Positions 5,701 through 62,400 are shown, counted from the first letter of the stretch. The stretch is 64,000 nt of DNA from Takakia lepidozioides (GCA_030704615.1 CM060732.1:38626001-38690000); one strand, 5' to 3'. Notes: generated by a model not told the origin, from the sequence alone. Translations and numbers: made by a program.

Positions 5701-7627
5701 TCATGGGATCGCCACCGCGCTTGATAAGCTCGTTGACAATACCATCAGGTCCACCAGCTTTATATCCATTTAAATGTTCAATTGCTTCCACAATCTCAGA
5801 AGAACTAATGGGAGCATTATAAGCCATTGAAATATACTCCAGTTCATCAGGGCTGTTTTGAATCATAGGAACAGTTTTTCCAACTGTGTCCCTCCATTCA
5901 GCAGAAGACCCCTCACTGTTAGACCTAGAAGTTCTGCCAAGGATACTGTAGTGAGTTTCAAAGGTTTTGACAATGTCAACCGATGAAGTCACCACTGCAC
6001 CTTTAGTAGTCTTCAGCGCTTGTACTTGCTGACCGTTTTTCGGCTTGTACAAACGTTGAAGGGCCAACCAGAATTTCTTGTCATTACCACCATGGTGGTT
6101 TGAGTTTATTTCACTGTATAACTTGTCCCAGTATAATTTCTTCTGAGACCTAACAAGCTGATTGATATCTTTACGGAGCTGGTAGTACCTCGCCCACAAT
6201 TCTCTGTTGGTTTCCAAATTGCAGCACTCTTTATAGAGGGCTCATCTCTCAGCTATCTTGAGTTTAATCTCATTAGTCCACCAATTAACTGCTCTACCGC
6301 AGACAATTAGTTTCCTCCCAATGATCTTGTCAGCCACGGAGGAAACGAAACTCTCCCAAGAGTCCACTGCTCTTTCGACTTCATTTCTTGCGTTAACAGA
6401 GCGTGACTGAAGTTCTTGGAGCGATTGGACAAAATGAGGGAGAGCCTCTTGCAAGGCCTGGACGTACTCAGCCTTGACCTCCTCATTGTGGAATTTTTCT
6501 ATGCGCCACTTCCGAATCGAACGTTTCACAGATCTCTTGGTGGTGGGAAAACACCTTTTGATCTCAGTCCAAACCAGGAAGTGGTCAGAGGTACCAATAT
6601 CAGTTCTGTCGATCAACACATTGGCACACTGGGGGAACAAAATTTTGTCCATTATGATATAGTCCACAATGGAACGTTCCCCAGTTTGGGATTTCTCACG
6701 AGTCCACTGCACTTGGTCACCTCTTGTCCTGTTATTCAAGGTCAAAAGCTGAAGCTCTTCTAGACAGTTAATTAACCGTCTGCCATTAGAATTCAGCTCG
6801 TCCTCACCAAAAGGTCCAATGATATTGTCCTGATGGAGCCCTTTGCCCACCTGGGCATTGAAGTCCCCCAATAGTACCACCTGACCTTTGGCAAGGAACG
6901 AAGCACAGTCCAGCTTTACATCTTCGAAGGCCTTGTCTGCGTCAGCACTAAGGGTCCCCTCTGTGGGCATGTAAACACAACCAACAAAGAGGTCCTTTGT
7001 ACTCATGCCGCCCTTCAGATTCAGTTTTAGCCAGATACTATGCTCGTACCTCAAACCCTTGTTGATAATTTCACAATTGTCAAACAAGAAATCACGGACA
7101 AAGAATCCGACCCCTTTTTGACCGCGTTGGCAGAGGCTGCCTTGAGAGTACACATCTTACCTGCCCATTTATAACCAATGACATCTCCAACCAGTTTATC
7201 CGACGTTTCCCATGTTTCTTGCCCAGCACAGATATGAATATCATTAGTCCGAAGAACTTGTCCCACTTCAAGTTGTTTTGTTTGGTTGGTCAACCCTGAG
7301 AAGTTCAAAGTGGCCAGCCGCAAGCCAGCTATTTGCGTGTGAATTGTTTGTTGTCTAGGTAGCTTGTGATTGCTCCTGGGCGGCCAACCGTTCTGCAAAG
7401 GGGGGACAATTACCCCATGTGTAGATTTTGCTCGTCTTGTGTAAACTTTGAGAATTGGTAAACCATTCAGGGTACCAAATCTTTCAGTTACACGAAGCAC
7501 AGGCTCCGCACACATAGGGGCAGATTGTCCGTCAGAACGCTTGGGGACAATTACCCCGTGTATAGATTTTGCTCGTCTTGTGTAGACTTTGAGGATTGGT
7601 AAACCATTTAGAGTACCAAATCCTTCC

Positions 7628-7682
<55 letters not shown>

Positions 7683-10600
7683 GCTTTGTGCACCTCTCTG
7701 ACTTGAGCCTGCATTTTTGACCCAGAAGGTTAATGCATTAATGACCCATTCAAGTGAACGGGATCGAGAGCTGCACCTGGGGGACAAGGTCGATGGTGCA
7801 CCATGGGGACTTAACAAACCAGTTGAGAAGCTTGGGCCCTCTGCTGCCACTACCACCCACAAGCCACTTCAGCACTGGGAGCATCACACTCGCCATATCC
7901 AGCACTGATGTGAATGTGTTCTCAAGTATCAAAGCAGACACCTGCAGCATCAGACCAACAGTCAGTGAACTTCTCCATCCCCACCTCAGAATCCACTTTT
8001 CTTCTCAAAGATCAGTTTTGAAATTGACATGAACTTCTTCCAGCTTGAACAGCTTTTTGTTTGGACAACGACATGAAAATACAAGAGCAAATTGCCCACC
8101 TTGCCTGGATTGTTCTTTACAAGAGCCGAACCGACAGCTCCGCCAAGTGATCGTCCGAACACGACAATCCTACTTGCATCTACGTCCGTTCTCTGTCTCA
8201 AGTGGTCCAGTGCTGCCTGCACACCGTGACATTGTATTAAAATTGCACTAACAAGTTTGCAGAGCAGTTTGGACAGGAAAGAACAGAAGAGAAACAATGT
8301 CTTCAGATTAATCTTCCAGATCTTGCCTTCTATATACTTGATATATGAGCTTGCTCTCCATTCTGGGAACAACTTTTGGTGAAAATGTGTACCACCAAAA
8401 GGGAGAGAGGAGGGACATATACTGACTACTGCAGACAACATTTAAGTGCTAGAAGTGACAGGTCTCAACGATATAAAAGCTAACTTCAGGCTTTATGTCC
8501 ATGAACCTGAGCATCAAGAGTGAGACCTGGTTGAGATGGAAATCCATCACTTGCTCCATATCTGCACACAAACATGAATGCTCAGAACAGTACTGGAGGC
8601 CAAAGCTTGGTACTATTCTTGATCTCATGGCTCTGCAGCTAAAGGTTAGAATCACGGGCTTCAATGGCATCTTGCTTTCGGGAGGAGATCAGCCAGTCCC
8701 TGTGAAAATACTCACGACTTGGTTACAGCACCTAACTGAAATAACCAGGGTTTACCAAATAATGAATTCAGAGAATAGCAAGGAAGAGGGAGAACTTGAA
8801 ATACCAGCCACTGTGGTGTTCACATTAGAGATCTAACCAATTGGTTTCACACGCATCTGATCAGCAAATCTAGTCACTAAGTAAGAGATTTCCTATGAGA
8901 CCAAGCCTTTCCATCATTGATGACAGTGTGAAGTTTACACCCGACCACCAACAAGTGGACATCCTGGGATTGAAATGGTAGTTGTCTGTGACTCTAGTTC
9001 TATTCATGGCTTCTGGATCCAATATAGCTGAGACATGGTTGACTTGTGATGGTAAGGCACTTTCTTGACTTAAACATGCTTTGTTATGTGCCATACTAAT
9101 GACCTAATGAAGACCAGCCATCAAATCATAAGCTGAGATCTTGGCTCGTAGCATGTGATTTGTGTCCTTTTGCCCATCAGGACTTCATTTATCAAAGCAA
9201 GGACTGCAACATTGGGATTGTACACTCCACAATAATGTGCAAAAAGGATTGCAAGCTAGCTTGACCTACAAAGCAGACCTGAATGGGGAGCACGTACCCA
9301 CGATATGAAAGCATGAAAACATTGCATCGTAGACGCTGTAGCATTATGTCCACAAATTCAAGCCTGTGTGCAATGTCTTTGTAAGAGGGTGGTTAAAGAT
9401 TACTTCTCCTCTCCATCCTTCACTATACTGTAGCAGTTGCTCGAAGGTTGAAGAATCTTTCTTACATTCATCTCTCCCTCTCTCTCTCACACTCTCTCGC
9501 TTCCCTTTGTGTTCCACTCAAACTGGGCGTGGGGTCAATGGTCACAAGGCTACAGCAAACAACGTCTTATGAGTACATACTCTCTCTCTCTCTCTCTCTC
9601 TCTCTGCTACGGCAAACAAGTCTTATGAGTACACTCTGTCCCTCTCTCTCTCTAGGCTAAGGCAAACAAAGTCTTATGAGTACATCCTGTCCCTCTCTCT
9701 GTGTCTCTCTCTCTTACAATGAAAACAACAGTTCTTTCTCTTTCATTTGACACCATTCCATGGAATATATATCATTTTCTCATCTGGACAGTTGATGGTA
9801 CAGTGACAGTCTTGATATGCATCTGACAACCACAACTCTTGTTTCCGTTGTGCATGTCTGTGCCAGAAGTTCTTTACACTCAGAAGACTACTAGAATCAT
9901 CTTGCATATACTCCGCATCTCTTTAGAAGGCCACAAACCAAATCATCCAAAAAGGAGGATACTGCCAGCATTCTCCTGAAAGAACAAAATGGTGGGACCT
10001 GCAAGCATAGGTGTGACAAAAACCACCTATTAAAACAAGGCAAGGGGACTGGGCAGATAGAGAGATGCACACACAAACAGGGTAAGGGAGGTGCACAGTT
10101 CTGGTCACACTAAATTTCGCCTTTGCAGCGTGAAGTAAGATATGTCTTTCCTGTTTATGTTGATGCACATGGCAAATGCGTATGCGGAACAATTCCCATA
10201 GGCTCAAAGGTGTAGGGCTCAGTTTCCTAGTAACACAGCTGATAGGGCACATAGTTTGCTGCTTACACCAAGTTGTTGTCAATCGATTAATTCAGCTCAC
10301 CATATGGTGGAAACCATGGGCTGCGAATAAGCTGCGCTGCAAAGTTTCAATTCCTTCCGCATACTTGTCAGCCTTAAGCTAGGAAGGGCACTGTACTATA
10401 AGAAACATATGCGGACTCCCCTCAAACATCAGTCATCGCAAGATTGCATTGACGAGCTGGACAATGGTATACACGACTGCGATCCTGGAGGTCAAGAGAA
10501 TCTTTAACTGGAGATTGATGCTTTAAACCTACATTTCAGAATCCGTGCTGTCTTCCTTCAGTGGTACCACTTTCAGTGTGCTTGCCGCAGAACAGGTCAA

Positions 10601-11365: not shown

Positions 11366-11397
<32 letters not shown>

Positions 11398-11716
11398 ATC
11401 GATTTGAAGGTTTAAGAAGAATCGGTGGTGGGTGTGCCCTATTCTGGGCTGCGAGGATTCCATCCACAGTTCTTTGTGAGAAGATCTTCCCAGACATTTC
11501 TTTGAGCATTCGGACTGAATCGCTGTCTGAGGAGGGGATTTCTTCACTCAGATACGCGCTAGATTGTTAGTTGAAGAGATAGACCTGAAGTTTGGGATTC
11601 GAGATTTTACTGGATAGATTTGTGGACAGGGACAGGATTTAGGAATCAGTCTGTGTGCTGTTGTATCTGGAGCGTATCGAGAGAGAGAGAGAGAGAGCAA
11701 ATTTGCATTTGTGAAG
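11006..11716. promoter_or_regulatory. Putative bidirectional promoter/UTR region between WAV2 and prohibitin, with (CT)n and (GA)n tracts
   Basis: Divergent ATGs about 710 bp apart; (CT)n at about 11366-11392 and (GA)n at about 11678-11697. Function is inferred. Confidence 0.45.
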
Positions 11717-21087: not shown

Positions 21088-24022
21088 AACAGGTCGATTG
21101 ATTCAGAGTCCACATGGGGAGACAATAGCTGCATCATGCAAGAAGTGGGACAGAATATCATTTCTTTTTCTCTCCGTGTACTGTGAGATGCCTACAAAAT
21201 GCCATTTCCTCTAAACAGTGGATCTGGCTGTGCAACGACAGCCATGATACACCTGCATTAGGGTAGATGGCTACAGCAGCAGTGCTTGAAGCAAAGCCAT
21301 GCTATCTTGCATGTCATCAATACCTTGTGTAACTGGACTGCGTCAGCTGTGCAGCACCAAAGAAATTTTAGCCCAAGTAGGATATACTAAATTAAAATGC
21401 AGGACCAGTACTAGAGGGCTCGGTACCCCTCTTTCTCTCTCAAGGACCAGTGAGCCCCTTTCATAGAGTGTGTCTGAGTCTACATGCAGCAGGGACAGAG
21501 ACAAAGAGCCACACCCTGTACTCTAAGCTCGTGACCCCAAAAACCCCAATGTCAGTCAGGTCCAACTTGATTGAGGCTTTAAGTTACTTCGAGGAAACAG
21601 CAGACTTGGGAGATTTAGAGAGAGGAAATCAAACATTTCTGACTTTGCATAGCTTTGAAGCAAAGGGCACCCAAAAATAGTCACATTACTAACCCCATAA
21701 TCAACTCTGCCTGAGCAAGCACCACCTGACTCAACTTCCTTAATTGCCTCAGTGATTGCCACGTATGTCTGTCATATACACACACACCCATGTAACAGTC
21801 AGAGCCCAAAAGAATGCACCATGAGACAGTGTTTACTGTAGCCTTGTGACATAGATCTGCACCCAGTTTGGGCAAACAAGAGGAACAGACACTACCTTGA
21901 GGGGCTCACTCCATTAGGGGAAACCTTGGTATAAATAATTGGATTGGTTGGGCATTCCAGATTTCCTGTAGAAATCCCTCAGTTCACACAAGCATCAAAT
22001 CTGCTGAGTGTGAGCTGCCCAGCAATTAGACCCCAACAGGCCCAGGGCTTTAGGCTCAGCTTCAAGATTTTGAAAGTTGGTGGACAGAGGTGGAGGGACT
22101 ATGTTCTTGATGGTTCTGAAGAGGGTCGCTCTCTAACGAGGACACCCCGCACATTGTATCAGAAAATGGATATTGTCTTCAGGCCGCCCCGCACATTGGG
22201 CATTGACAATCTCCCTTTCCTCTCTGCATCTGGTTTTTTGTTCAAAGGTAGACTCGGCCCCCTGGTTTGAAATTCAGTCTATTCCCAAGGGTTGGTAAAC
22301 TGGAAACAAGTTTAGGGAAGTTTTATGCCTGACAAAAGAATGTATTCCTGAGACGTTTGGCTGTAGCCTTGTGGCTATGCAATGTTTTGTACATAACAAA
22401 GAGAAAGGTAGAGAGAAATGGAAAGTTCTCAGAAATGTAGTCCTCAATTTGAACTCTAGCTAGTGAGAAGAAAAAATGTTGGTTAAGAAGAAAGAGGACT
22501 CCTCCCAGAGAAAGCCTAATTTATAGTGTCTCTTCATCCCCAAGGAATACTGCCCTCCGTTGGAAGGTGGACACTTTGAGCCCACCTAGGTTATGCACAG
22601 GAAAGGCACAAACACCCAAGCATTGGACTACCTGCTCTAGTGCCATGTGGGTTAACAGTATTAGTGAACCTACAGGATTGTTGACGGCAATTCCTCCATC
22701 AATCATGTGGTACTCTCGACTGACTGGCGGACTCTTCGTTGTGTCCGACACCGTGAATTCAACGGGAGGAAAATAAGTAGGAGCGGCTGATGTAGCTCGA
22801 CACACATGTTTCATAGTCGCATTATCAAGATGGTCGTGTTTCGCCTGAAGATAAAATTCAATCAGTCATCGTCGCAATGATACTAAATGAAAAGGTTGCG
22901 AATCAATTCAATCTCTACATGCACTACTTGAGTTCAAATGGTGGAACCAACGGCGTGTAAGAGAGGGAGAAGGAGGGATACCTTCCACGATGAGAAGAAA
23001 ACAGGCTGCTGGATCCTGATATCGAAAGATGGAATGATAACGGAAGTGAGTGTGCTCTCCAAGCGGTCGTCGTCACTAAAGTACTGCGATAGCACGCCAT
23101 CGAGACCTCTGGCTTTGTACTTTGGGCCGGTGAGTGCTGACAGATTTTTCCGGATTTGGGCAAAGGGACCCCTATTGAAGTCATCCCACTATCTCGACTC
23201 AAAAAGTGACTCGTATTGAGATTTCAGAGCAAATGCGCACTACTCAGAAACCCTTCAAGAACCTTATAGTGACACGGGCTTCTTCGTCGAACAATGTAAC
23301 TCCAGATAAGAGTGAGACGAACTGTTGAAATAGTTAGATTTTCTCAACAGGTGTAGAGGTGAGGATTTTTCTTTGTGGTTGACATACATCCAATGATCTT
23401 GGACTTCAGATCGTTTCTTCTATCCACATGCTGTCTAATAAAGAACACAGATCGGGGACTTCAGCTGAAAGCCATACCTGGCTTGTGGGAATATTTGACT
23501 GGCATATTTCTTGTAGAATTGAATCACTTCCCGAGCACTGCACAGTGGCCGTTTTGAGTTCTGTTTGCTTGGGGCGGCAATCATGGCAGTAATTAGACCT
23601 CCCGTGCTGGTGCCCGCAATGAGATCAAAGTAGTCCACCAGTCTCACGTCCGGTCCATCCAAACGCTGCTCAACAGGAAAACATCTTTCAGTCAAGGGAA
23701 GACATCCTGCTTAGGTCCTGCTTCTACCAATTACCCACGGGTAGATATGGATGCACCCATTCAGTACCTGCAGCCTGGCTTCAAGCTCTTCCAGAATGAT
23801 CGCAGGGATGAGGCCTCGCACCCCTCCCCCATCGATGCTCAAAATTGTAATCCGCCGGCCTTTGTCTCCGCCCGGCTTAAGCTGTTCAAATGATGTCGGC
23901 ATACTTACCCTCTTGCGAGAGGGAGAGATTGGTGTGGAAGGGGGTGATGGGGGAGGCAGAGAGAAGCAGACCGACAGAAATCCTCCTTCTAAGTACTGTG
24001 AGGTCCTTGATCTCTCCGTCAT
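19111..24022 (-). CDS. Patatin-like phospholipase A (pPLA-II-like), 656 aa with long C-terminal extension
   Basis: Eight phase-consistent exons: 24022-23768, 23665-23478, 23171-22982, 22844-22674, 21768-21694, 20853-20632, 20254-20079, 19804-19111. Motifs [31 protein letters not shown] and YLRIQ are intact. Confidence 0.92.
21820..22380 (-). mobile_element. Diverged 3' fragments of the RTE/RTEX-like LINE in patatin intron 4
   Basis: Similar to the LINE 3' region (GTAGCCTTGTG terminal motif twice; zinc-knuckle-region homology). Confidence 0.7.
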
Positions 24023-41400: not shown

Positions 41401-42005
41401 ATGAGTCCCAAGACTCCCCACGACCCACCTCGAGGTCTCCACCCCATGGTGAGTCCTATGCCACCCCCACTAAGTCCCGCTAAGCTACCACCACCCCTTG
41501 TGGAGCCACCCCCACCGCAACCCGGTGTGCGGGGCTCCACTTAGTGAGCGCCTCCGCCTCCTTGAGTGCCTTGGGCACTCAAGGGTGCTTCAGCCCCGTA
41601 CCTATCGCTGCTACTGCCCCCACCACAGGGGCAGCCCCTCTTGTGTCCCGACCCCCCCTGCCCTCAAGGCAAAGGGCCGCGACACACGATGCAGAGGGAG
41701 GGATGGACCCCCTCCCCCCCTGTGTTGCGATTCCTGGGAGTCACACTATTGCGACACCCTGGAGGGGTGGCGACATCCCGCCGTCGCAGGTCGTGGCTAG
41801 GGGGTCCTGGGGGATTAGCGATTCCTTGCGGTCGCTAAATTGCGACATTCCGGGAGCAACGTCCGACCAATATCGGTGCGACTTCGTGACATCGCAATTT
41901 GCCCTGGGCGCCGTAGAGTATTTCCGTCACTAAGCGCGGCGTTTGGAGGTTGATGAGGCATCGCTAAAAACACAACCCCTCCCCCCCCCCCCAAACGTAG
42001 TAGTG
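38405..42005 (+). mobile_element. Truncated CACTA (En/Spm) element: right end plus degenerate TnpA-like exons
   Basis: Terminus GTAGTAGTG at 42005 (reverse complement CACTACTAC). At least 18 GCGAC/GTCGC subterminal motifs in both orientations at about 40590-41890. Spliced-looking remnants at about 39360-39850 (QESWEALI...HKWGPRG). Left end not found. Confidence 0.55.
40962..41684 (-). mobile_element. Solo LTR of the same Ty3 family
   Basis: Homologous to the two LTRs; TG..CA; perfect 5-bp TSD CACGA (40957-40961, 41685-41689). Confidence 0.95.
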
Positions 42006-43986: not shown

Positions 43987-46900
43987 TCATCGGTAGTAAG
44001 AGCCGATGAAGAAGAGTAGTGCTGATGAAACGAGAGTGACAAATAGCTCCTGAAAAACAACAAGAAGCAAGTGATAATGTCATGAAACCATGTGAATGAT
44101 GTTACATTCTGTGCTTCCATCAAGAGATCTTGGCCTTGCATCAATCAAGTACATCAGAACAAATCAATTTTGATACTGCAGTACACAATGTCGAACTTCA
44201 TTACAAATCCCTTTTGAGCGAAGATCATCTGGAAATTGGTCTTTGCACTGACATTAGGAATAAAAGTTGCAGATTCCACGGTCAACTACTTCCACAAACA
44301 CTTACCGTGATCAAGTCACTATACTTTACACTTTGTGAGTCATTATGGCAATGATTCAACCTGGTTGACAGGCCCAGGCTAGGCCATGTGAATGTGACTA
44401 CCATGTTTGAATCCTTGAAGTCAACAGCTACCTGCAATTATGTCCTGGACATTGTAATGAGCTGACTTCCAATGATCACTGTACTCTATATTTCTCTCAT
44501 GTTGATTCTTTCTTTAGACACAATCCACAAGGCTACAGCAAGCAATGTCTTATGAGTACATTTGTTTTTCTTTAGACGGACTAAACCCTAGATTCACATC
44601 TGTGCTGTTAGCAGGACTGTTACTTACTTGGCTGTTTATGAATGAACGAGGGATATTTTGCCCTAGAAGCTCAAACATATTAAGTGTACCAGTGAATGCC
44701 TGCAGAGCACAACCAGAAACCAACCATCAACTTGACAAGAAGAGAGCAGATGGACAACAGTGGATAGACTTAGAAGATGTCGAAGATTCAAAACCATCAC
44801 TCATTTTAGCTGTTGGCAGCGCAGAATATTCAGAGACTAATAGCAGGGGACAGAGACACACCAGCGAGGCAAATGCAACACAGCTAAACACTAGACCAAG
44901 TGTCCGTAGCAGCCGCTTTCCATTTCTGCTCCTCCTACTTTGGTCCTCATCTTCCTGCTCTCACAAACAGCCAGTGTCAAAGCATGTTTCAATCTAGACA
45001 GCCCTTGAACGAAAGTAATACACTTCCACTCCTTCCTCTCTCTCTTTAATACTCCGGTCTCTATGTTTCTCTTGATGGATAGCAGCTAGGTGAAGCCAGA
45101 GAAGACTACTATTCCTCACTAACCACTAATAATTGGTTGTGGCTCTGACAGGGATAGGAGCAGGTGAGGCTTCAACTTTGCCTTAATAGCAAGGGGTGGT
45201 TGCGGTCTAAGTGACTTTCTTCTGCCAAACCTATGAATGATGTATGGTTGTTTCAGCATGGAATTGCACATTTCGTTAAGGATGATCTTTCAGTATGCTG
45301 CTTGAAAAATTCTAAGCTATGAATTTATGATAGCTCTTAAATATACACATCGCTTAGGCTCTGCGTTGGATAGTATCCAATCTGATAGTCTAGTGTATCA
45401 AGTGCTTGATGATCAAAATGATTTCCTCTGGCAATTGCAACTAAAAGTGCCTTAATTTCTACTTCCCACCCTGACTAGTAGTAGCTGAAAATGAAAGAGA
45501 CTGAAGTATGATGGGGCCTCCTCTAGGCGGATGATGTCATTAAATTTCTTGTCTGATTCCGTTTGAATCACTCATCCCCTGTCTCTTGTCTAACTCCGTA
45601 TGAATCAGTCAAACCCCGTCTTCACAGGACAGTAGTGACCTCTCTCTCTCTCTCTCTAGACTAGTAGTGACTCTCTCTCTCTCCATACCAGCCCTTATGT
45701 TTGCGGATGACTTCACAGGCATAGGGGAGACTCCAATCAATCTCCAGGAGTTGATTGATTGTGCGAAGAGATACTTTGATCTTTGGGGGCTAGAGGCTAA
45801 CGTCAGCAAATGTGCAGTGGTAGCATTCAACGACAGAGGAGAGGGAGGAAGTGATCTCAAGTGGCAGTGGGGTAGCCAAGAGATCCCAGTCCTCCCTTCC
45901 TACACTTACCTGTTTTCCTCCAATTGTAATTGGGATACACATATCCGGAAAGTTGTTCAGACTGGCAAGGGCAAAGCTCTGGGTCTCACTAGATTTTTCC
46001 ACTGCAGAGGGGTCAACTCTGAGGTTAAGAAAACCATGCTTTGTCGCGTTATTAGACCTGCCTTGGAGTACGGATCTGCAATATGGGTTGATAACTCCAA
46101 CCAGGCTAAGTCTCTAGAATCCATTCAAGTGGGGGTGCTTAAGGAGTGCATGTCAGCATGCTCCAAAACAGCCAATGTGGCTGTTCGGGGTGAGTTTGGC
46201 ATCCCGTCCTGAAGCTCCTGACGCGATGAATTCAAGGTCAGATGGTGGGGTCAGCTGCAACATATGTCCAACACCAGATATCCTAAGTTAATCGACTCTA
46301 CATCTTGGAAACAGGACCGCCCTGTCAAACAGGCTAAGTCCTGGCAGAAGAGAGTAGAAGAGATTCTCAAGGACCTGGATCTGGATCCGCAAGTCTTGAC
46401 CCTGCTGGATAAATCTGACTTCGAGGCTGTAGTGTCCAAAGCCATGTCTGTTGCCATGAAATTGTCTGATGAAAATGAAGTTAGGCAGAAAACTTCCCTA
46501 ACTTGTTTCCAGTCTGTGACATGGGGGAGGACATCTTGGATGACCTCAAGGGTCTACCCACTCTCGGCACTAGACTGAAATTTAAACTCAGTGCAGGAAG
46601 CCTACCTTTGAACAGCAAACAGAAGCAGAGAGGAAAGGGAGAGTGCAATTGCCCGTTGTGTGGGCAACCTGAAGACAATATTCATTTTCTGATACACCGT
46701 CCGGGGTTCTCTCACCAAAGAGACGATCTCTTCAAATCTATCAAGGGAATTGTGCCTGTACCTCTGTTTACCAACTTTGAAAGTCTCGAGGCTGAGCCAA
46801 AAGCCCAGGCCCTTCTGAGGCCTAGTTTTTGGGCAAATCACACACAGTATATTGATGGTTGTGTGAAGGGGTTTCTAGAGGATATCTGGAAAACCCGGAT

Positions 46901-49900
46901 CAATTTTTTGTATCAAGGTAAGTCTTACTACCAACGTCAGCCCCTGACAGAGGTAGGTTCTGTCCCTTTGTGTTCCGCTCAAACTGGGCCCGGGGTCAAT
47001 GGCCACAAGGCTACGGCGAACAACGTCTTATGAGTACATTCTCTAGACTAGATCTCCCTGCCCTCTAGGAAGCCTATTGCCATTGGGTGGACTTGATACG
47101 GGAGTACATAAATGTCTCTGTATAGGCTTGGATTATGTGGCTAATGGCTCCATCTCGAGACTTGGTAACAGAGGTACTTTGAAGGTTTCAATGTCTAAAA
47201 ATGCTACAAATAGAGTCTCACATCATATCAACCTCAAAGAAGTTCGTCCCTTGACTGGCTGGAGAGCGGTCTTAGACATTGGTGATTCAATGAGGCGCTC
47301 TAGGAAGACAACCAAGGGCGAGGTCTTCAACTTGAAAGTTTCTAACCAGTTTGATGCACTGGATGAGGTTGATTCCAAGCAGTCAGACAGCCTGAGCGTC
47401 GGGTGACTGAAGGATTTGGTACTCTGAATGGTTTACCAATCCTTAAAGTTTAAACAAGACGAGCAAAATCTACACATGGGGTGATTGTCCCCACTTTGCA
47501 GAACGGTTGGCCGTCCAAGAACAACCATAAGGTACCTAGACGGCAAACAATCCATATGCAAAGGGCTGGCTCGCGGCTGGGCACTTTCAACTTCTCTGGG
47601 CTGACTAACCAAAGGAAACAATTTGAAGTGGGACAAGTTCTTCAGGCAAATGGTATTCATATCTGTGCAGGGCAAGAGACATGGGAAACTTCGGACAAAC
47701 CGGTTGGAGATGTCATTGGTTAGAGGTGGTTCGGTAAGATGTGTGCTCTTAAAAGGGGTTAGCTTCTTTGTCCGTGATTTCTTGGGTGACAACTGTGAAA
47801 TTATCAACAAGGGTTTGCAGTATGAGCACAGTATCTGGCTGAAAGTGAAATTGAAGGGCGGCGTGAATAAAAAGGACCTCTTTGTGGGTTGTGTTTACAT
47901 GCCCACAGAGGAGACCCTTAGTGCTGACGCAAACAAAGCCTTTGAAGACTAAAGCTGGACAGTGTTGTGTTCCTCGCAGGTGGTCTTATTGGGTGACATC
48001 AATGCCCGGGTGGGCAAAGGTCTTCACCAGGATGATACCATTGGGCCTTTTGGTGAGGACAAGCTGAATTGCAATGGAAGACGGTTAATAAACTGTCTGG
48101 AAGAACTTCAGCTTTTGACCTTGAATAATAGGTCAAAAGAAGACCAAGTGCAGTGGACTCGTGAGAAAGCCCAAACTGCCGAACGATCCATTGCGAATTA
48201 TATCATAATGGACAAGAATTTGTTTCCCTAGTGTGCCAATGTGTTGATTGACAGAACTGATATCGGTACCTCTGACCATTTGCTGGTTTGGACTGAGATC
48301 AAAAGGTGTTTTCCCAACACCAAGAGATCTGTGAAACGTTCGATTCGGAAGTGGCGCATAGAAAAATTCCAAAATGAAGAGGTCAAGGCTGAGTATGTCC
48401 AGGCCTTGCAAGAGGCTCTCCCTCACTTTGTCCATTCACTCCAAGGTTTTCTCGCTCTGGCAATGCAAGAAATGAAGTTGAAAGAGCAGTGGATTCTTGA
48501 GAGGTTTCGTCTCCTCTGTGGCTGACAAGATCGTTGGGAGGAAACTAATTGTCTGCGGTAGAGCTGTTCATTGGTGGACCAATGAGATCAAACTCAAGAT
48601 AGCCGAGAGACGAGTCGTCTATAAAGAGTGCTGCAATTTGAAAGCCAACAAAGAAATGTGGACTAGGTACTACCAGATCCGCAAATATATCAATCAGCTT
48701 GTAAGGTCTCAGAAGAAATTATATTGGGACAAGTTATATAGTGAAATAAACTCAAACACTATGCTGGTAATGACAAGAGCTGGTTGGCCCTTCAATGTCT
48801 GTACAAGCCGAAAAATTGTCAGCAAGTACAAGCGCTGAGGACTACTAAGGGTGCAGTGGTGACTTCAATGGTTGACATTGTCAAAACCTTTGAAACCCAC
48901 TACAGTATCCTTGGCAGAATTTCTAGGTCTAACAGTGAGGGATCTTCTGAAGAATGGAAGGACACAGTTGGAAAAACTGTTCCTATGATTCAAGACAGCC
49001 CTGATGAACTGGAGTATATTTCAAAGGCTTACAACGCTCCCATTAGTTCTTCGGAGATTATGGAAGCAATTGAACATTTAAACGGATGTAAAGCTGGTGG
49101 ACCTGATGGCATAGTCAACGAGCTTATCAAGCATGGTGGCGACCCCATGATAGAGGCCCTTGTACTTCTCTTTAACCTTATCTGGAGGACTGAAATGATC
49201 CCTTTTCGCTGGCGACAGGGGGTCATTGTCAACCTATACAAGAAAGGTGACAAAAAAGAGCCGGGGAACTACCGAGGCATCACGCTACTCAATGCAGTTG
49301 GCAAGATATTTTGCAGAGTTAAAAATACTCGTCTCGAGGTTGATTTGGAATCTAGAGGTTGTTTCCACGTAGGCCAAGCTGGCTTTCGGAGAAACTGGGT
49401 GTGGATCATATCTTCACTCTAACCCAGATAATCCAGGGAAGGGAAAAAGAAGGGAAACTCACTTTTGTCTTTCTCTTGGATGTCAAAAAGGCCTATGACA
49501 CAGTGTGGAGATATGGTCTATGGCTCGGACTCTGGTCATGTGTCAAGGGAAAGATGTGGAGAGTGGTCCATAACTTGTATGCTCACACCAAAAGTTGTGT
49601 CACTGTTAATGGACAGAAGTCTAACTTCTTTGACATAGACCAAGGTGTAGCTCAAGGATGTACCCTCTCGCCTCTGTTCTTCAATGTTTTCATCAATCAA
49701 CTCCTTGAGGATGTGGAAAGCGAGGGATTTGGGTTAAGGGTGGGTGATGCCACCATACCAGCCCTTATGTTTGCGGATGACTTCGCAAGCATAGGGGAGA
49801 CTCCATCCAATCTTCAGGAGTTGATTAATTGTGCAAAGAGATACTTTTTGGGGGGCTGTAGGCTAAGGTCAGTAAGTGCAGTGGTAGCATTCAACGACCG

Positions 49901-52900
49901 TGGGGAGGGAGGAGGCGACCTCAAGTGGCCGTGGGGAAGCCAAGGGATTCCTGTCCTCGCTTCCTACACACACGTTGGCATTGAGTTTTCCTCCAACTGT
50001 AATTAGGAAGCACCAATACGAAAAGTGATTCAATCTGGCAAGCGCAAAGCGTTGGGTCTCACTAAATTTTTCCACTGAAGTATAAAAAAACCATGATTTT
50101 CCACGTTATTAGGCCTACCTTGGAGTATGCATTTGCTGTGTGGGTTGATAACTCCAACCAGGCTAAGTCTCCGTCCCTGTCCTCTAGGAAGCCTATTGCC
50201 ATTGGGTGGACTTGATACGGGAGTACATAAATGTCTCTGTGACTAAATGCCGGCCTTGTGACCCTGTGTCTTTGTTTGTTTTGACCTGAAGCGCTTTGCT
50301 TCAGGTAAGGTAGTGCATTGGACTTAGTTGGAGAGTTTGGGGCCTTTCCCTCTTTAGAATATGCCTATGCGGGCCATTCCCTGCAGCTCCCTGGAGTGTG
50401 ATCTCTGAATGGTAACAAGCGGACCCCTACCGCTTGGGGGCAGCCCCTCCGCCCAAATTGGGCAGTCGTATGCTCTGTCTAGCATACTCGGCACTTGGGC
50501 TAGGGTTGGTCCTTGTGCTTAAACTTATAGCCTGCGAATTCTACCAATACATTACCTCTTATCAATAACACACTCCCCAGGGTGATTCCTGGGAATTGGT
50601 TACTTAGGCCAAATCTAGGGCTTCATGTGTAGTTTTTGGGGTGAATCCAGGATGGAAGATGTGTCCTTTAAAACTACATGCTCCAGCTTAGGCTTGGATT
50701 ATATGGCTAATAGTTCCATCTCGAGACTTGATAACAGAGGTACTTTGAAGGTTGCAATGCCCAAAAATGCTACTGATAGAGTCTCACATCAAATCAATCT
50801 CAAAGAAGTTCGTCCCTTGACTGGCTGGAGAGTGGTCTTAGACATTGGTAATTCAATGAGGCGCTCTAGGAAGACAACCAAGGGCAGGGACTTCAACTTG
50901 AAAGTTTCTAACAGGTTTGATGCACTGGATGAGGTTGATCCCAAGCAGCCAGACAGACAAACTGACCATAAGTGTGCTGAGCCTGAGCGTTGTGTGACTG
51001 AAGGATTTGGTACTCTGAATGGTTTACCAATCCTTAAAAGTTTACACAAGACGAGCAAAATCTACACACGGGATAATTGTCCTCCCTTTGAAGAACGGTT
51101 GGCCGTCCAAGAGCAACCATAGGCTACCTAGGACAAACAATTCATATGCAAAGGGCTGGCTTGTGGCTGGGCACTTTCAATTTCTCAGGGCTGACTAACC
51201 AAAGGAAACAACTCCAAGCAGGCAAATGATATTCATATCTGTGCTGGGCAAGAGACATGGGAAACTCCAGACAAACTGGTTGGAGATGTCAATGGTTCTA
51301 AATGGATAGGTAAGATGTGCGCTCTTAAGGCAGCCTCTGCCAAACGTGGTCAAAAAGGGGTTGAATTCTTTGTCCGTGATTTCTTGTGTGACAATGGTGA
51401 AATTATCAACAAGGGTTTGCGGTATGAGCACAGTATCTGGCTGAAAGTGAAATTGAAGGGCGGCGTGAATAAAAAGGACTCATTGTGGGTTGTGTTGACA
51501 TGCCCACAGAGGGGACCCTTAGTGCTGACGCAGACAAAGCTGGACTGTGCTAAGTTCCTCGCCAAAGGTCAGGTGGTCTTATTGGGTGACTTCAATGCCT
51601 GGGTGGGCAAAGGTCTCCATCAGATACCATCGGGCCTTTTGGTGAGGACAAGCTGAATTCTAATGGTAGACGGTTAATAAACTGTCTGGAAGAACTTCAG
51701 CTTTTGACCTTCAATAATAGGTCAAAAGGAGACCAAGTGCAGTGGACTCGTGAGAAAGCCCAAACTGGGGATCATTGTGGATTATATCATAATGGACAAA
51801 AATTTGTTTCCCCAGAGTGCCAGTGTATTGATCAACAGAACTGATATTGGTACCTCTGACCACTTGCTGGTTTGGACTGAGATCAAAAGGTGTTTTCCCA
51901 ACACCAAGAGATCTGTGAAACCTTCGATTCGGAAGTGGCGCATAGAAAAAGTACAAAATGAAGAGGTCAAGGCTGAGTATGTCCAGACCTTGCAAGAGGC
52001 TCTCCCTCATTTTGTCCACTCGCTCCAAGACCTTCAGTCTTGCTCTGGCAATGCAAGAAATGAAGTCGAAAGAGCAGTGGATTCTTGGGAGAGTTTCGTC
52101 TCCTCTGTGGCTGACAAGATCGTTGGGAGGAAACTAATTGTCTGCGGCAGAGCTGTTCATTGGTGGACCAATGAGATCAAACTCAAGATAGCTGAGAGAC
52201 GAGTCCTCTATAAAGATTGTACTCATAAGATGTTGTTTGCCGTAGCCTTGTGGCCATTGTGGCAGTCCTCTATAAAGAGTGCTGCAATTTGAAAACCAAC
52301 AAAGGATTGTGGGCTAGGTACTACAAGATCCGCAAAGATATCATTCAGCTTGTAAGGTCTCAGAAGAAATTATACTGGGACAAGCTATACGGTGAAATAA
52401 ACTCAAACCACCATGGTGGTAATGACATGAGATTCCGGTTGGCCCTTCAACGTTTGTGCAAGCCGAAAAATTGTCAGCAAGTACAAGCGCTGAGGACTAC
52501 TAAGGGTGCAGTAGTGACTTCAATGGCTGACATTGGAAAAACCTTTGAAACCCAGTACAGTATCCTTAGCAGAATTTCTAGGTCTAACAGTGACGAGTCC
52601 TCTGAAGAATGGAAGGACAGTTGGAAAAACTGTTCCTATGATTCAAGACAGCCCTGATGAACTGGAGTACATTTCAAAGGCTTACTTGTTTCCAGTCTGT
52701 GACATGGGGGAGGACATCTTGGATGACCTCAAGGGTCTACCCACTCTCGGCACTAGACTGAAATTTAAACTCACCAGGCCCTTCTGAGGCCTAGTTTTTG
52801 GGCAAATCACACACAGTAGATTGATGCTTGTTTGAAGGGATTTCTAGAGGATATCTGGAAAACCCGGATCAATTTTTTGTATCAAGGTAAGTCTTACCAC

Positions 52901-55900
52901 CAACATCAGCCCCTGACAGAGGTAGGTTCTGTCCCTTTGTGTTCCGCTCAAACTGGGCGCGGGGTCAATGGCCACAAGGCTACGGCAAACAACGTCTTAT
53001 GAGTACATTCTCTAGAATCCATTCACGTGGGATTGCTCAAGGAGTGCATGTCAGCATGCTCCAAAACAGCTAATGTGGCTGCTCGGATTGGGTTTGGCAT
53101 TCCTCCCTTAAGCTCCCAGCGGGATGAATTCAAGGTCAGATGGTGGGGTCAGCTGCAATGTATGACTAATACCAGATATCCTAAGTTAATCGACTCTATA
53201 TCTTGGAAGCAGGAGCACCCTGTCAAACAGGCTAAGTCCCGGGGGAAGATGGTAGAAGAGGATTTCAAGGATCTGAATCTAAGTACAAAGCCCTGTCTGT
53301 TGCCAGGATATTGTCTGATGAAAATGAAGTTAGGCATAATACTTCCCTGAACCTGTTTCCAGTCTGTGACGTGGGTGAGGCCATCATGGATGACCTCAAG
53401 GGTTTATCCACTCTCGGCACTAGACCGAAATTCAACCTCAGGGCCAGTAGCCTACCTTTGAACAGCAAACAGACGCAGAGAGGAAAGGGGGATTGTAAGT
53501 GCCCCTTGTGTGGGCAACCTGAAGACAATATCCACTTCCTGATTCATTGTCCTGGGTACTCTCACCAGAGAGACACCCACTTCAATTCCATCAAGGGAAT
53601 TGTTCCTGTACCTCTGTTACCAACTTGTGTGAAGGGAGTATATCTGGAAAACTTGGATCAATTGCATGTTTCAAGGTAAGTCATACTACCGGTGTCAGCC
53701 CCTGACAAAGGTAGATTTTGTCCCTTTGTGTTCCGCTCAAACTGGGCACGGGGTCAATGGCCACAAGGCTACGGCAAACAATGTCTTATGAGTACATTCT
53801 CTCTCTAGACTAATCAAATTATCAAGGTATCAAGGAAGTCATACTACCAGAGTGAGCCCCTCACAAAGTAGCTTCTGGTCCCTTTTGTTCCGCCCAAACT
53901 GACCGCGGGGTCTATGGCCAAGTGATCTCAAGTGGCAGTGGGGTAGCCAAGAGATCCCGGTCCTCCCTTCCTACACTTACCTGGGCGTTGAGTTTCCTCC
54001 AATTGTAATTGGGATGCACATATCTGGAAAGTTGTTCAAACTGGCAAGGGCAAAGCTCTGGGGCTCACTAGATTTTTCCACTGCAGAGGGGTCAACTCTG
54101 AGGTTAAGAAAATCATGCTTTGTCGCGTTATTAGACCTGCCTTGGAGTACGGATCTGCAATATGGGTTGATAACTCCAACCAGGCTAGGTCTCTAGAATC
54201 CATTCAAGTGGGGGTGCTTAAGGAGTGCATGTCAGCATGCTCCAAAACAGCCAATGTGGCTGTTCGGGGTGAGTTTGGCATCCCGTCCTGAAGTTCCCGA
54301 CGAGATGAATTCAAGGTCAGATGCAACATATGTCCAACACCAGATAATCGACTCTATATCTTGGAAACAGGACCGCCCTGTCGAACAGGCTCAATCCTGG
54401 CAGAAGAGAGTAGAAGAGATTCTCAAGGACCTGGATCTGGATCCGCAAGTCTTGACCCTGCTGGATAAATCTGACTTAGAGGCTGTAGTATCCAAAGCCA
54501 TGTCTGTTGCCATGAGATTGTCTGATGAAAATGAAGTTAGGCAGAAAACTTCCCTAACTTGTTTCCAGTCTGTGACATGGGGGGACATCTTGGATGACCT
54601 CAAGGGTCTACCCACTCTCGGCACTAGACTGAAATTTAAACTCAGGGCAGGAAGCCTACCTTTGAACAGCAAACAGAAGCAGAGAGGAAAGCGAGAGTGC
54701 AATTGCCCGTTGTGTGGGCAACCTGAAGGCAATATTCATTTTCTGATTCACTATCCGGGGTTCTCTCACCAAAGAGACGCTCTCCTCAAATCTATCAAGG
54801 GAATTGTGCCTGTACCTCTGTTTACCAACTTTGAAAGTCTCAAGGCTGAGCCAAAAGCCCAGGCCCTTCTGAGGCCTAGTTTTTGGGCAAATCACACACA
54901 GCAGATTGATGGTTGTGTGAAGGGATTTCTAGAGGATATCTGGAAAACCCGGATCAATTTTTTGTATCAAGGTAAGTCTTACTACCAACGTCAGCCCCTG
55001 ACAGAGGTAGGTTCTGTCCCTTTGTGTTCCGCTCAAACTGGGCGCGGGGTCAATGGCCACAAGGCTACGGCAAACAATGTCTTATGAGTACATTCTCCTC
55101 TTCTCTCTCTCCCCATAGAAATCCATGCCTGACATAAACCTGACACGCAGTGCTCAAAATAGAATAGGGAGTAGACTTGAAAAGGAGCTTGGAGCAGGTT
55201 CAAAATCCTTCAGCTTGTTGAATATCCGAAACATGTATCCAAATATTAGAAACTGCAGTGGTTTCCACTCTGCTGAACCGGCTGACACCATCCAGATGGA
55301 CTGTGTCCACACACCCACACCCCATCCAGCTGGGATCTCTCAAACGGTCCATGAACATCATACATGCAAAAATTTATGCAACTCACACAGTTGAGTCCTA
55401 ATTGTATTTCGAAATGTCATACTTGACTATGAATGATAATCCTATGATTGCTTGGATAAACTTGCCCTAGGTTAATGCATAAGCTTCTACATCTCCTATA
55501 AGCACCTCAATCCCTCAATTGAAGATGAAGAAAGTAGCTTACAAAAAGGACAGAGATGGCCAGATTGATAAGAATGTCCCATTTATTCGAGTGCGCTGCC
55601 CTGCAGCATGCAATCCCCTGATTGCTAAGCAAAAATGAGCTCATTCTGGACAGTGTTGAGTATTGCATGATTATGAGAGGTCGCACAGGGAGACAGAGAT
55701 ATGAAGACTACCACAATCCTATGCACATGTACCCTGTTTAGGGGACAGTAGCAGAGATTTTATTGATCAGGTCACGTGACAGGGGAGACAGTGTACTCTT
55801 ATTTTGTGTAGTGCCAAGGTGCTTTAGGTAGTCCTTGAGTCCCACTTGTTCATCAAAGGCTGTGGAGAAGCTCAGTGTAGTCCCAGCTAGGCTTCAGCTA

Positions 55901-61494: not shown

Positions 61495-62400
61495 ACCTTT
61501 GTGAGGGGCTCACTCCAATAGTTGGAGCTACCTTGATATAAACAATTGTTGCATCAATCTGTTGTGTCTGAGCTACCTAGCAATTAGACCCCAACAGGGC
61601 CAGGGCCTTAGGCTCAGAATCGATACTTTGAAAGTTAGTGAACAGAGGTGCAAGCACTATACGGTCCTGAAGAGGGTGGCTCTCTGATGAGAATACCCGG
61701 GACACTGTTTAGAAAATGGGTATTGCCTTCAGCGCGCCCACACATCGAGCATTGACAATCTCCCTTTCCTGTCTGCATGTGTTATTTGTTCAAGAATTGA
61801 CCCCCGCCCTGGGGTTAAATTGTAGTTTAATGCTGAGGATAGGTAGGCCTTTCAGCCTAAGGTTCACCCATGTCACAAACTGGAAACAAGTTCAGGGATG
61901 TTTATTCCTAACTTGTTTTTGTTCAAGCATTATTCATGCTTCGGACGTGGCTTTAGACACTTCAGCCTCCAAGTGAGCTTCATCCAGCAGGGTCAGTTCT
62001 TCCTGCCCAAACTTCAGGTACTTGAAACATCTCCTCTACATTTTTCTGCCATGACTTCAAATTGTTTAACAGGACGGTCTTGCTTCCAAGAAATAGTCTG
62101 TCATCTTAGGGTATCTGGTATTAGGCACTGAAAGCTGAATGGATTTTAAAGTTTTAGGCATGGTTGGAGTTGCTCTCTCACACGGCAATGCCTACTCCAA
62201 GGTAGGCCAACATGGTCGTTGTAACTTCAGTATTAATCCGTCTGCAGTGGAAACATTTGAGTGAGAATATCCAAAGTTTGTATTTAGTTGTTTGACCTGT
62301 TTTGTGTATGTTCATCACAGTTACAACTGGAGGAGAACTCCACAGCAAGATATGTGCTGGAAGGGAGCACACAATTGTGGCATTTAATGATCGTGGGGAG
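61495..62400 (-). mobile_element. Old, degraded copy of the same LINE family
   Basis: Patchy similarity to 3850-4870 (GTCACAAACTGGAAACAAGTTCAGGGA, GGCTTTAGACACT, TGCAGTGGAAA, ACAACTGGAGGAGAACTC). Lies downstream of a GTAAGT donor at about 60969. Confidence 0.7.

What the first reader, a model, noticed from the sequence alone, without database searches (positions are those of the whole stretch)
45630..55112. Apparently sequence-targeting, self-nesting LINE that builds arrays at (TC)n/TCTCTAGA sites
Seen: 3' junctions read TACAT|TCTCTAGACTAG (47040), TACAT|TCTCTAGAATCC (53009) and TACAT|TCTCTCTCTAGACTA (53800). The array is preceded by (CT)n-AGACTAG (45640-45664). The nested copy 50171-53009 sits exactly in the family's own internal AAGTCTCTAGAATCC. 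Elsewhere, copies abut (TC)n on both sides (3727, 7631, 9480-9715). Known: microsatellite-specific APE LINEs exist in animal R1 and Tx1 clades. Inference: this plant RTE/RTEX-like family targets TC repeats/TCTCTAG, and because it lays down (TC)n tails and carries the site internally, it regenerates its own targets. I do not know such a system from land plants.
Basis: partly seen in the sequence, partly recalled or inferred. Interest (0 to 1): 0.85.

Follow-up and report, generated by a model that had tools for sequence, protein, structure and literature searches.

The report
Site-reusing LINE that stacks at TC-rich sites
A very abundant jumping gene (a LINE retrotransposon) in this land-plant genome inserts again and again at short TC-rich sites, including a site inside its own coding sequence, so it piles up in head-to-tail and nested arrays; fish have a comparable TC-repeat-targeting LINE, but I found no report of one in land plants.

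Summary

**The array.** 45640-55114 is not a duplication. It holds at least five separate insertions of one LINE family (APE endonuclease, reverse transcriptase, C-terminal CCHC), of different ages and with different 5' truncation points.

**Site reuse.** One 11-bp site, TCTCTAGACTA, occurs three times (45653, 47040, 53802). This is what two successive insertions into the same site would leave, each duplicating it.

**Nested insertions into known sites:**
- Copy C sits in the family's own internal TCTCTAGA.
- A 47-nt inverted 3' stub, new here (52217-52263), has a perfect 15-bp duplication that begins TCTTTATAGA and has no TC tail.

**Other events in the window:**
- A 42-nt stub has an 11-bp duplication, TTTCTTTAGAC.
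- A site beginning TCTTTTG was used twice.
- Two arrays lie in (TC)n tracts.

**Genome-wide.** Contigs from public runs show (TC)n after the 3' end and the same head-to-tail joints elsewhere. Depth suggests roughly 10^4 copies.

**Reading.** Integration starts at the 5' edge of TCTYT, often followed by TAGA. The junction TC letters are at least partly target-derived. The duplication regenerates the site.

**Not shown:** that the element adds TC tails, its RTE/RTEX clade, and whether protein or RNA pairing sets the specificity.

The scan's first readers noted the same family on other DNA of this genome at least 15 times.

The parts
45640..45664 (+). Upstream copy of the reused target site: (CT)9 then AGACTAG. 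TCTCTAGACT lies at 45653-45662.
   Evidence: A short-read contig of run X1 spans 44533-45712 with no differences.
45663..45683 (+). Extra 5' junction sequence, AGTAGTGAC(TC)6. It repeats the unique flank at 45631-45639 plus TC units.
   Evidence: AGTAGTGAC at 45631 and 45663. Its origin, template switch or slippage, is inferred.
45683..47039 (+). Copy A: young, 5'-truncated at reference position 2713, ends TGAGTACAT.
   Evidence: K2P distance is 0.029 to D and 0.150 to B.
47040..47051 (+). Second copy of the site, TCTCTAGACTA(G), lying between A and B.
47052..50170 (+). Copy B, 5' part. B is full length and old or diverged (0.15-0.17 from all other copies), with many indels and stops.
50171..53008 (+). 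Copy C: young, has a full-length 5' end and large internal deletions. It is nested in B's internal TCTC|TAGAATCC. It carries a 448-nt 5' segment (50241-50688) that B lacks.
   Evidence: The 3' 325 nt are 0.019-0.025 from A and D.
52202..52278 (-). Inverted 47-nt 3' stub (52217-52263) inside C. It is flanked by a perfect 15-bp duplication (52202-52216 and 52264-52278). In stub orientation the duplication reads TCTTTATAGAGGACT. There is no TC tail.
   Evidence: The uninterrupted site is seen in B at 48613-48627 and in M1.
53009..53797 (+). Copy B, 3' part.
53798..53812 (+). Third copy of the site: TCTC then TCTCTAGACTA.
53813..53920 (+). Fragment O: an old 5'-truncated piece of a diverged relative. 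It resembles the copy at 61500-62210 and lacks its last ~45 nt.
53921..55093 (+). Copy D: young, 5'-truncated at reference position 2877. It joins directly to O, which I infer reflects a target deletion at integration.
55094..55124 (+). TC-rich tract after D, then ATAGAAATCC.
44509..44577 (+). Solitary 42-nt 3' stub (44520-44561) plus TTGTT. It is flanked by the 11-bp duplication TTTCTTTAGAC (44509-44519 and 44567-44577).
3046..7678 (-). Second array. M1 (3754-7630) is younger. M2 (3065-3725) is older and lies downstream of M1. (CT)24 lies upstream of M1 (7631-7678). A TC-rich tract lies between them (3726-3753) and another after M2 (3046-3064).
9471..9713 (+). Third array: three 3' stubs (about 9501-9578, 9606-9634, 9654-9685) separated and flanked by TC-rich tracts.
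21807..22376 (-). Old stub (to about 22340) followed by an old 5'-truncated copy (22300-21814). The site TCTTTTG occurs after both (22333-22339 and 21807-21813).

Best explanation
**What it is.** This is a high-copy non-LTR retrotransposon family. It has one long ORF of about 1,250-1,350 aa. The ORF runs from an N-terminal extension with an NRFDALDE motif, through an APE-type endonuclease and a reverse transcriptase, to a C-terminal Cx2Cx7Hx4C knuckle. The stop codon lies 6 nt before the element's end.

**How it integrates.**
1. It integrates by target-primed reverse transcription.
2. The first nick falls at the 5' edge of a short pyrimidine motif, TCTYT. The motif is either part of a (TC)n microsatellite or is followed within 0-2 nt by TAGA.
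3. The second nick falls 7-15 bp downstream.
4. Every insertion therefore duplicates the motif and leaves a usable site on both sides of the new copy.

**What follows.** The same site is hit repeatedly, which builds head-to-tail arrays. The family's own coding sequence contains the motif once on the sense strand and once or twice on the antisense strand, so copies also nest in one another.

**Shown:** target preference, duplications, site reuse, nesting, and differing ages.

**Inferred:**
- The nick position.
- That choice of site combines an endonuclease preference with base pairing between the nicked GA-rich strand and a U/C-rich 3' end of the RNA. That RNA end could be the element's own terminal letters or read-through of the donor's flank.
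- That the ~40-nt stubs are aborted reverse transcriptions.
For: **Domains.** One search finds PF14529 and PF00078. Searches give the ORFs and the CCHC. Searches show the CCHC and the C-terminal peptide conserved in relatives at about 40% identity.

**Copies and truncation points.**

**Ages.** One search gives K2P distances of 0.029 (A-D), 0.019-0.025 (C to A and D), 0.053 (M1), about 0.10 (M2) and 0.15-0.17 (B).

**Duplications and sites with a known uninterrupted form**:
- A 15-bp duplication, TCTTTATAGAGGACT, around the inverted stub, with the uninterrupted site in B and M1.
- An 11-bp duplication, TTTCTTTAGAC.
- TCTCTAGACT(A) present three times in the array.
- C in TCTC|TAGAATCC.
- TCTTTTG used twice.

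**Statistics.**
- Nine of 14 3' junctions begin TCT.
- In one search, 5' flanks with TC tracts give P about 2e-6.
- In one search, TAGA within 8 nt in 4 of 7 junctions gives P about 3e-6, a post hoc test.
- The motif TCTY-N0-2-TAGA occurs only 3 times in a full element on both strands. Both nested insertions hit such a site.

**Genome-wide.**
- 100 contigs continue CTCTCTCTCT after the 3' end.
- There are joints from the 3' end plus TCT or TCTCT to a full-length 5' end.
- There are joints back to about 40-nt stubs.
- One contig has (CT)11 close upstream of a full-length 5' end.
Against: - The sample is about 14 events from one 64-kb window, and several share a site lineage.
- The TAGA component was defined after seeing the data. 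It is absent from the pure microsatellite sites (M1, M2 and the stub array at 9.5 kb).
- Two of the few 5' loose ends that one search printed are not TC-rich, so the preference is not absolute.
- Exact TCTCTAGA and TCTTTAGA sites in the window are unoccupied (35539, 9920, 50351). So are three TC tracts (11367, 11680, 21046).
- No empty allele from another individual was recovered.
- Nothing here separates endonuclease specificity from RNA pairing.
- I cannot exclude that some TC runs are added by the reverse transcriptase.
Confidence: 0.8

Rival explanations
1. Specificity is purely protein-encoded. The endonuclease, or another DNA-binding part of the ORF, recognises TCTY(N0-2)TAGA or (TC)n as R1- and Tx1-type site-specific elements recognise their sites. 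RNA pairing plays no part.
For: TAGA lies 4-6 nt downstream of the inferred nick in five independent sites. That is beyond what a few terminal U/C letters of the RNA could pair with. The inverted stub has no tail.
Against: Pure (TC)n and TCTTTTG sites lack TAGA. Read-through RNA carrying the donor's flank could also pair over TAGA. No biochemical data exist.
Confidence: 0.35
2. The TC tracts are only element-encoded tails made by reverse-transcriptase slippage. Integration itself is unbiased, and arrays reflect chance or local reinsertion.
For: (TC)n follows the 3' end in most copies genome-wide. Many LINEs of the RTE, CR1 and I groups have microsatellite-like tails (PMC3747384 table 3; PMC6007223).
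Against: TC tracts also lie at 5' junctions of truncated copies. The TCT letters lie inside perfect duplications and inside sites whose uninterrupted form is known. One 11-bp site was used at least twice, and TCTTTTG twice.
Confidence: 0.05
3. The array is a segmental or tandem duplication, unequal recombination between copies, or a misassembly.
For: Repeats of this density are hard to assemble. Only the left edge of the array is confirmed by an independent contig, and that run may be the assembly's own sample.
Against: The members differ in 5' truncation point (2713, full length, 2877) and in divergence (0.02-0.17). C is nested, not tandem. The same junction types occur in contigs from other loci.
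Confidence: 0.03
4. Head-to-tail runs arise in single events, when the reverse transcriptase jumps from one RNA template to the 3' end of another and makes concatemers.
For: The three stubs at 9501-9685, and the recurrent 'goes back 39/46' joints, could be made this way. End-to-end template jumping is known for R2 reverse transcriptase (from memory).
Against: In the main array and in M1/M2 the neighbours differ by 10-17%, so they cannot come from one event. The three stubs also differ from one another at several positions.
Confidence: 0.1

Closest known systems
Kibi (KibiDr1/2, KibiFr1, KibiTn1): (TC)n-specific APE-type LINEs of teleost fish. Koshi (TTC)n is in the same group. Source: Kojima and Fujiwara 2004, as summarised in PMC3812793.
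   Same: An APE-type LINE found inside TC microsatellites, so that copies carry TC repeats on both sides.
   Different: Kibi is from fish and is placed in the Tx1 group; from memory that group has ORF1 plus ORF2. Here the host is a land plant. There is a single ORF with no ORF1. The APE matches PF14529, not the L1-type profile. Short non-repeat sites (TCTY..TAGA) are used as well. Copy number appears very high. Phylogenetic relatedness was not tested.
RTE-clade LINEs and their SINEs: insertion signature and 3' microsatellite-like repeats (Nishiyama and Ohshima 2018, PMC6007223). RTEX families of green algae have (CA)n, (CAA)n and similar 3' repeats (PMC3747384, table 3).
   Same: A single ORF with APE and RT, almost no 3' UTR, and a repeat at the 3' end. 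The first letters of the duplication match the 3' repeat. This fits cleavage or priming guided by the RNA's terminal repeat.
   Different: In RTE the reported overlap is one or two bases and insertions are dispersed. Here the match is 5 nt or more, sites are reused, and arrays form. A conserved C-terminal CCHC is present. Clade membership is untested.
R1-clade microsatellite elements (Waldo at ACAY repeats, Mino at AC repeats) and R1Bm, where read-through target sequence on the RNA aids precise insertion (cited in PMC3812793 and PMC6007223).
   Same: APE LINEs with repeat targets, and a possible role for pairing between the RNA 3' end and the target.
   Different: They are from insects and belong to the R1 clade with two ORFs. 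No relationship is shown.
Zepp / ZeppL LINEs of green algae, which accumulate by inserting into one another (from memory, not checked here).
   Same: A self-nesting LINE that builds clusters in the green lineage.
   Different: They are in the L1 clade with poly(A) tails, and their clusters are telomeric or centromeric. No TC motif is known to me.

Membership tests
Sequence- or microsatellite-specific APE LINEs (functional class, e.g. Kibi) | Encodes an APE-type endonuclease and a reverse transcriptase. | tested here: met
   PF14529 (E 2.8e-7) and PF00078 (E 8e-16).
Sequence- or microsatellite-specific APE LINEs (functional class, e.g. Kibi) | Copies are flanked on both sides by the target sequence, and the target letters lie inside the duplication. 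| tested here: met
   Duplications of 15, 11, 11 and 7 bp all start T(T)TCTYT. (CT)24 and other TC tracts lie at 5' junctions. The sample is small, about 14 events.
Sequence- or microsatellite-specific APE LINEs (functional class, e.g. Kibi) | Most copies in the genome sit in the target (strict specificity). | tested here: inconclusive
   One search shows (TC)n after the 3' end in the consensus of 100 contigs. Two of the four informative 5' loose ends it printed are not TC-rich. No genome-wide census was possible.
Tx1 group of the L1 superfamily (the clade of Kibi) | Groups with Tx1 in an RT phylogeny. | not testable with these tools
   No named reference sequences could be fetched. The best database hits are unnamed.
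Tx1 group of the L1 superfamily (the clade of Kibi) | A separate ORF1 upstream of ORF2, and a C-terminal CCHC (features recalled from memory). | tested here: not met
   The CCHC is present. No ORF1 is present: the reading frame runs from about 190 aa upstream of the APE. The N-terminal pieces have no Pfam match. The APE piece finds no solved L1 endonuclease at E up to 1.
RTE group (RTE / RTEX) | A single ORF with APE then RT, a very short 3' UTR, and a microsatellite-like 3' end. | tested here: met
   The stop codon lies 6 nt before the 3' end. TC repeats follow.
RTE group (RTE / RTEX) | Groups with RTE/RTEX in an RT phylogeny. | not testable with these tools
   There is only a lead. The nearest language-model clusters for the APE piece include one auto-named 'Craniofacial development protein 2', a name that derives from an RTE endonuclease. 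Ectocarpus proteins are among the best RT hits, and RTE and RTEX elements are reported in the kelp Saccharina (PMC4421812).

The most novel reading that the evidence does not exclude
Target choice may be partly RNA-guided and heritable. Transcripts read through into the donor's own flank (UCUC..UAGA), and that flank pairs with the nicked target. A copy would then pass on the address it sits in, and the duplication remakes the address on both sides. With roughly 10^4 copies, this one family would largely write the (TC)n microsatellite landscape of a land-plant genome. It would also be the first microsatellite- or motif-targeting LINE described in land plants, and possibly the first in the RTE/RTEX group.
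Probability: 0.3. Interest if true: 0.75.

Novelty: new variant of a known kind. Interest (0 to 1): 0.62.

Why it matters
Target-specific LINEs are known mainly from animals, usually at low copy number, in the R2, R1 and Tx1 lineages. A high-copy, motif-targeting LINE in a land plant would matter in three ways:
- It would extend this strategy to plants and probably to another LINE lineage.
- It would explain why TC microsatellites and LINE 3' ends co-occur throughout this genome, including in introns according to other notes of the scan.
- It offers a natural system for asking whether a LINE's address is read by its endonuclease or by its RNA. That question bears on the design of retrotransposon-based site-directed insertion tools.

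Practically, the family will confound microsatellite markers and repeat annotation in this species.

Tried and rejected
**Searches for more copies that found nothing.**
- Two exact-pattern scans of the metagenome contigs for the element's 3' end found nothing.
- The C-terminal ORF found no homologues in the word-indexed protein search.
- The same ORF is not on record as a called gene.
- No further copies from this genome could therefore be fetched.

**Relatives at about 40% identity (L001-L007).**
- They share the CCHC and the C-terminal peptide.
- They have no TC tracts.
- The L002 family has about 1.3 kb of shared sequence after the stop codon and sits inside larger repeats.
- They therefore say nothing about targeting.
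- A 'TAGAC' after the stop codon in L002 turned out to lie inside that shared sequence. I dropped it as coincidence.

**Naming and clade.**
- The best representative hits are unnamed or 'hypothetical'.
- Solved-structure searches gave only generic L1 and R2 RT matches, and nothing for the APE.
- The clade therefore remains open.

**Other checks.**
- The RNA fold of the last 125 nt is no better than shuffles (z -0.38), so I claim no 3' structure.
- All flanks of the insertions are unique in the window, so only the two nested insertions have a known uninterrupted site.
- Literature searches were unproductive.
- Runs X5 and X7 are only guessed to be RNA, so I draw nothing about expression from them.
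Full report
**1. What is there**

A blastn search of copy B against the window, plus a tblastn search with the family's ORF pieces, finds one LINE family at seven places. Together they cover about a fifth of the 64 kb.

The most intact copy is M1 (3754-7630, minus strand). It gives ORF pieces with an APE-type endonuclease (PF14529) and a reverse transcriptase (PF00078). Its C-terminal region carries CPLCGx7Hx4C.

The frame is continuous from about 190 aa upstream of the endonuclease, so there is no separate ORF1. The stop codon is the TGA in ..CTTATGAGTACAT, so the 3' UTR is six letters long.

The window also holds an intact 841-aa DYW-type PPR gene, a Band 7 gene and Ty3/Gypsy remains. These fit a land plant.

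**2. The observation**

My layout of the finding is:

| Coordinates | Feature |
|---|---|
| 45640-45664 | (CT)9-AGACTAG |
| 45663-45683 | AGTAGTGAC(TC)6, a repeat of the unique flank plus TC units |
| 45683-47039 | Copy A |
| 47040-47051 | TCTCTAGACTAG |
| 47052-50170 and 53009-53797 | Copy B |
| 50171-53008 | Copy C, nested in B |
| 53798-53812 | TCTCTCTCTAGACTA |
| 53813-53920 | Old fragment O |
| 53921-55093 | Copy D |
| 55094-55114 | TC-rich tract |

**3. Not a duplication and not a single event**

The copies differ in where they start: A at reference position 2713, D at 2877, and B and C at the full-length 5' end.

K2P distances over the shared 3' region are:

| Comparison | Distance |
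|---|---|
| A to D | 0.029 |
| C to A and D | 0.019-0.025 |
| M1 to A and D | 0.053 |
| M2 to the others | about 0.10 |
| B to all others | 0.15-0.17 |

B also has many private deletions. So B is old or from a diverged subfamily, and A, C and D are young, independent arrivals. In the second array the younger M1 lies upstream of the older M2.

**4. Target-site evidence**

- (a) The string TCTCTAGACT occurs exactly three times in the window, at 45653, 47040 and 53802. These are upstream of A, between A and B, and between B and O. Two successive insertions into one site would leave this pattern, each making a duplication of about 11 bp.
- (b) Copy C splits AAG|TCTC|TAGAATCC. That sequence is uninterrupted in A, D and M1, and 3-4 letters are duplicated.
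- (c) New here: inside C lies an inverted 47-nt 3' stub (52217-52263).
  - It is flanked by a perfect 15-bp duplication (52202-52216 and 52264-52278).
  - The uninterrupted site is visible in B (48613-48627) and in M1.
  - In stub orientation the duplication reads TCTTTATAGAGGACT.
  - It follows ..GAGTACAA directly, so there is no added tail, and the TCT letters are certainly target letters.
- (d) The solitary stub at 44520-44561 has the 11-bp duplication TTTCTTTAGAC.
- (e) At 22.3 kb an old stub and an old truncated copy are each followed by TCTTTTG. This is a second case of site reuse.
- (f) M1 has (CT)24 directly at its truncated 5' end. The stub array at 9.5 kb has TC-rich DNA on both outer sides.

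Aligned on TAGA, the independent short sites read:

| Site | Where |
|---|---|
| TCTTTA-TAGA | Inverted stub in C |
| TTTCTT-TAGA | Stub at 44.5 kb |
| (TC)n-TAGA | Reused array site |
| TCTC-TAGA | C's site in B |
| ..CCCCA-TAGA | Flank of D |

**5. Statistics**

- Outside the family, TC-rich 12-mers occupy 0.1% of strand positions. Three of five outermost 5' flanks have one (P about 2e-6).
- TAGA within 8 nt of the end of the TC run occurs in 4 of 7 independent junctions (P about 3e-6). This is post hoc, and about 6e-4 after allowing for 256 tetramers.
- Nine of 14 junctions begin TCT.
- The motif TCTY-N0-2-TAGA occurs once on the sense strand and twice on the antisense strand of a full element. 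Both nested insertions sit at such a site.
- The motif was partly defined from those sites. The fair version takes TCTYTAGA from the two non-nested sites. That motif has one instance in the element, and C hit it.

**6. The rest of the genome**

I laid contigs of four public runs on 44400-50399. The organism name is coded; one run is labelled plant metagenome.

- In run X1 the summed contig depth is about 57.6 on the unique flank and 1.0-1.5 million on the element's 3' third. The tool warns that this is not a copy number. As a rough guide it points to the order of 10^4 3' ends at 90% identity or more.
- One hundred contigs leave the reference after ..TACATTCTCT and continue CTCTCTCTCT.
- Several contigs join the 3' end plus TCT or TCTCT straight to a full-length 5' end (TCCCTGTCC..). 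Others join it to truncated copies, or back to a stub of about 40 nt.
- One contig has (CT)11 close upstream of a full-length 5' end. One stub is preceded by TC-rich DNA containing TCTCTCTAG.
- Two other printed 5' loose ends are not TC-rich.
- An X1 contig covers 44533-45712 without a difference, which confirms the array's left edge. That run may be the assembly's own sample.

**7. Mechanism**

*Shown:*
- Preference for sites that begin TCTYT.
- Duplications of 7-15 bp that contain the motif.
- Repeated use of the same site.
- Nesting into the family's own motif.

*Inferred:*
- The first nick is at the 5' edge of the motif.
- The nicked GA-rich strand pairs with a U/C-rich end of the RNA. Such 3' microhomology is described for RTE, CR1 and L2 elements (PMC6007223).
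- The duplication leaves a fresh site on each side, so no tail synthesis is needed to regenerate targets.
- D joined upstream inside O with loss of about 45 nt, a target deletion.
- The recurrent 28-47-nt stubs are aborted reverse transcriptions. They may instead be template jumps.

Whether TAGA is read by the protein, or is matched by read-through RNA from a donor sitting in such a site, cannot be decided here.

**8. Comparison with what is known**

(TC)n-specific APE LINEs exist in fish: Kibi, with Koshi at (TTC)n, Waldo and Mino in insects, and Dong at (TAA)n (PMC3812793).

Flowering plants are reported to hold almost only L1-clade LINEs with some RTE. Green algae have RTEX families with non-A 3' repeats (PMC3747384).

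My full-text searches found no target-specific LINE described in land plants. That is absence of evidence in the library searched.

The clade could not be tested:
- The best hits are 30-50% identical unnamed proteins from arthropods, Ectocarpus and Rhodelphis.
- The only pointer to RTE is a language-model neighbour cluster named after an RTE-derived protein.
- The CCHC is conserved in relatives at about 40% identity.
- Those relatives have a long 3' UTR and no TC tracts. The near-absent 3' UTR and the TC association are therefore features of this plant family.

**9. Verdict**

It is a new variant of a known kind: a motif- or microsatellite-targeting APE LINE, here in a land plant, at very high copy number, with visible site regeneration through the duplication.

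First readers of this scan noted the same family on other DNA of this genome at least 15 times. None of those notes had been followed up, and I did not use them as evidence.

Noticed in passing
window 9501-9685; also 44520-44561, 52217-52263, about 22340-22376 (minus), 2204-2225 (minus): Very short 3' stubs of 28-47 nt recur, nearly all starting in the same 10-nt stretch (..CCACAAGGCTACGG..), sometimes in tandem. Contig joints 'goes back 39/46' show the same thing elsewhere in the genome. This suggests a favoured stop or jump point for the reverse transcriptase. The fold of the region is not significant.
   Followed up: partly
window 11364-11397 and 11679-11697: (TC)13 and (AG)9 microsatellites lie just upstream of the start of a Band 7/SPFH gene (ORF 11711-12562). 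They are not occupied by the LINE. These are TC targets near a gene start that have stayed empty, possibly through selection.
   Followed up: no
window 13531-16056 (minus): Intact 841-aa intronless PPR protein with E, E+ and DYW deaminase domains. This is typical of land-plant organelle RNA-editing factors.
   Followed up: no
window 28791-30665 (minus) and the GC-rich, strongly skewed stretch 28-34 kb: Ty3/Gypsy chromovirus remains: RNase H, integrase zinc domain, SH3_Tf2-1 and a chromodomain.
   Followed up: no
window 50241-50688: Copy C carries a 448-nt segment in its 5' region that copy B lacks. Its contig depth in run X1 is repeat-like, so it probably belongs to the full-length element, and B has a deletion.
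   Followed up: partly
window 61500-62210 (minus) and 53813-53920: A second, much more diverged relative of the family (about 64% identity, 35-50% at protein level). Fragment O in the array resembles this relative rather than the young copies.
   Followed up: partly
L001 7950-11530; L002 8100-11720 (= L004-L007): LINEs about 40% identical in unrelated ENA assemblies (GC 57% and 41%) share the CCHC knuckle and a C-terminal ..VNG..ATA.. peptide with the plant family. The L002 family is multi-copy and near-identical over about 1.3 kb beyond its stop codon.
   Followed up: partly
window 40001-42000: A 2-kb stretch with GC 0.59, well above the window mean of about 0.46. Not examined.
   Followed up: no
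window 46800-47199, runs X5 and X7: Two runs guessed to be RNA show relatively more contig depth on the last few hundred letters of the element and the first 150 of the next copy than the DNA run does. This could reflect transcription or stub content. It cannot be interpreted from contigs.
   Followed up: no
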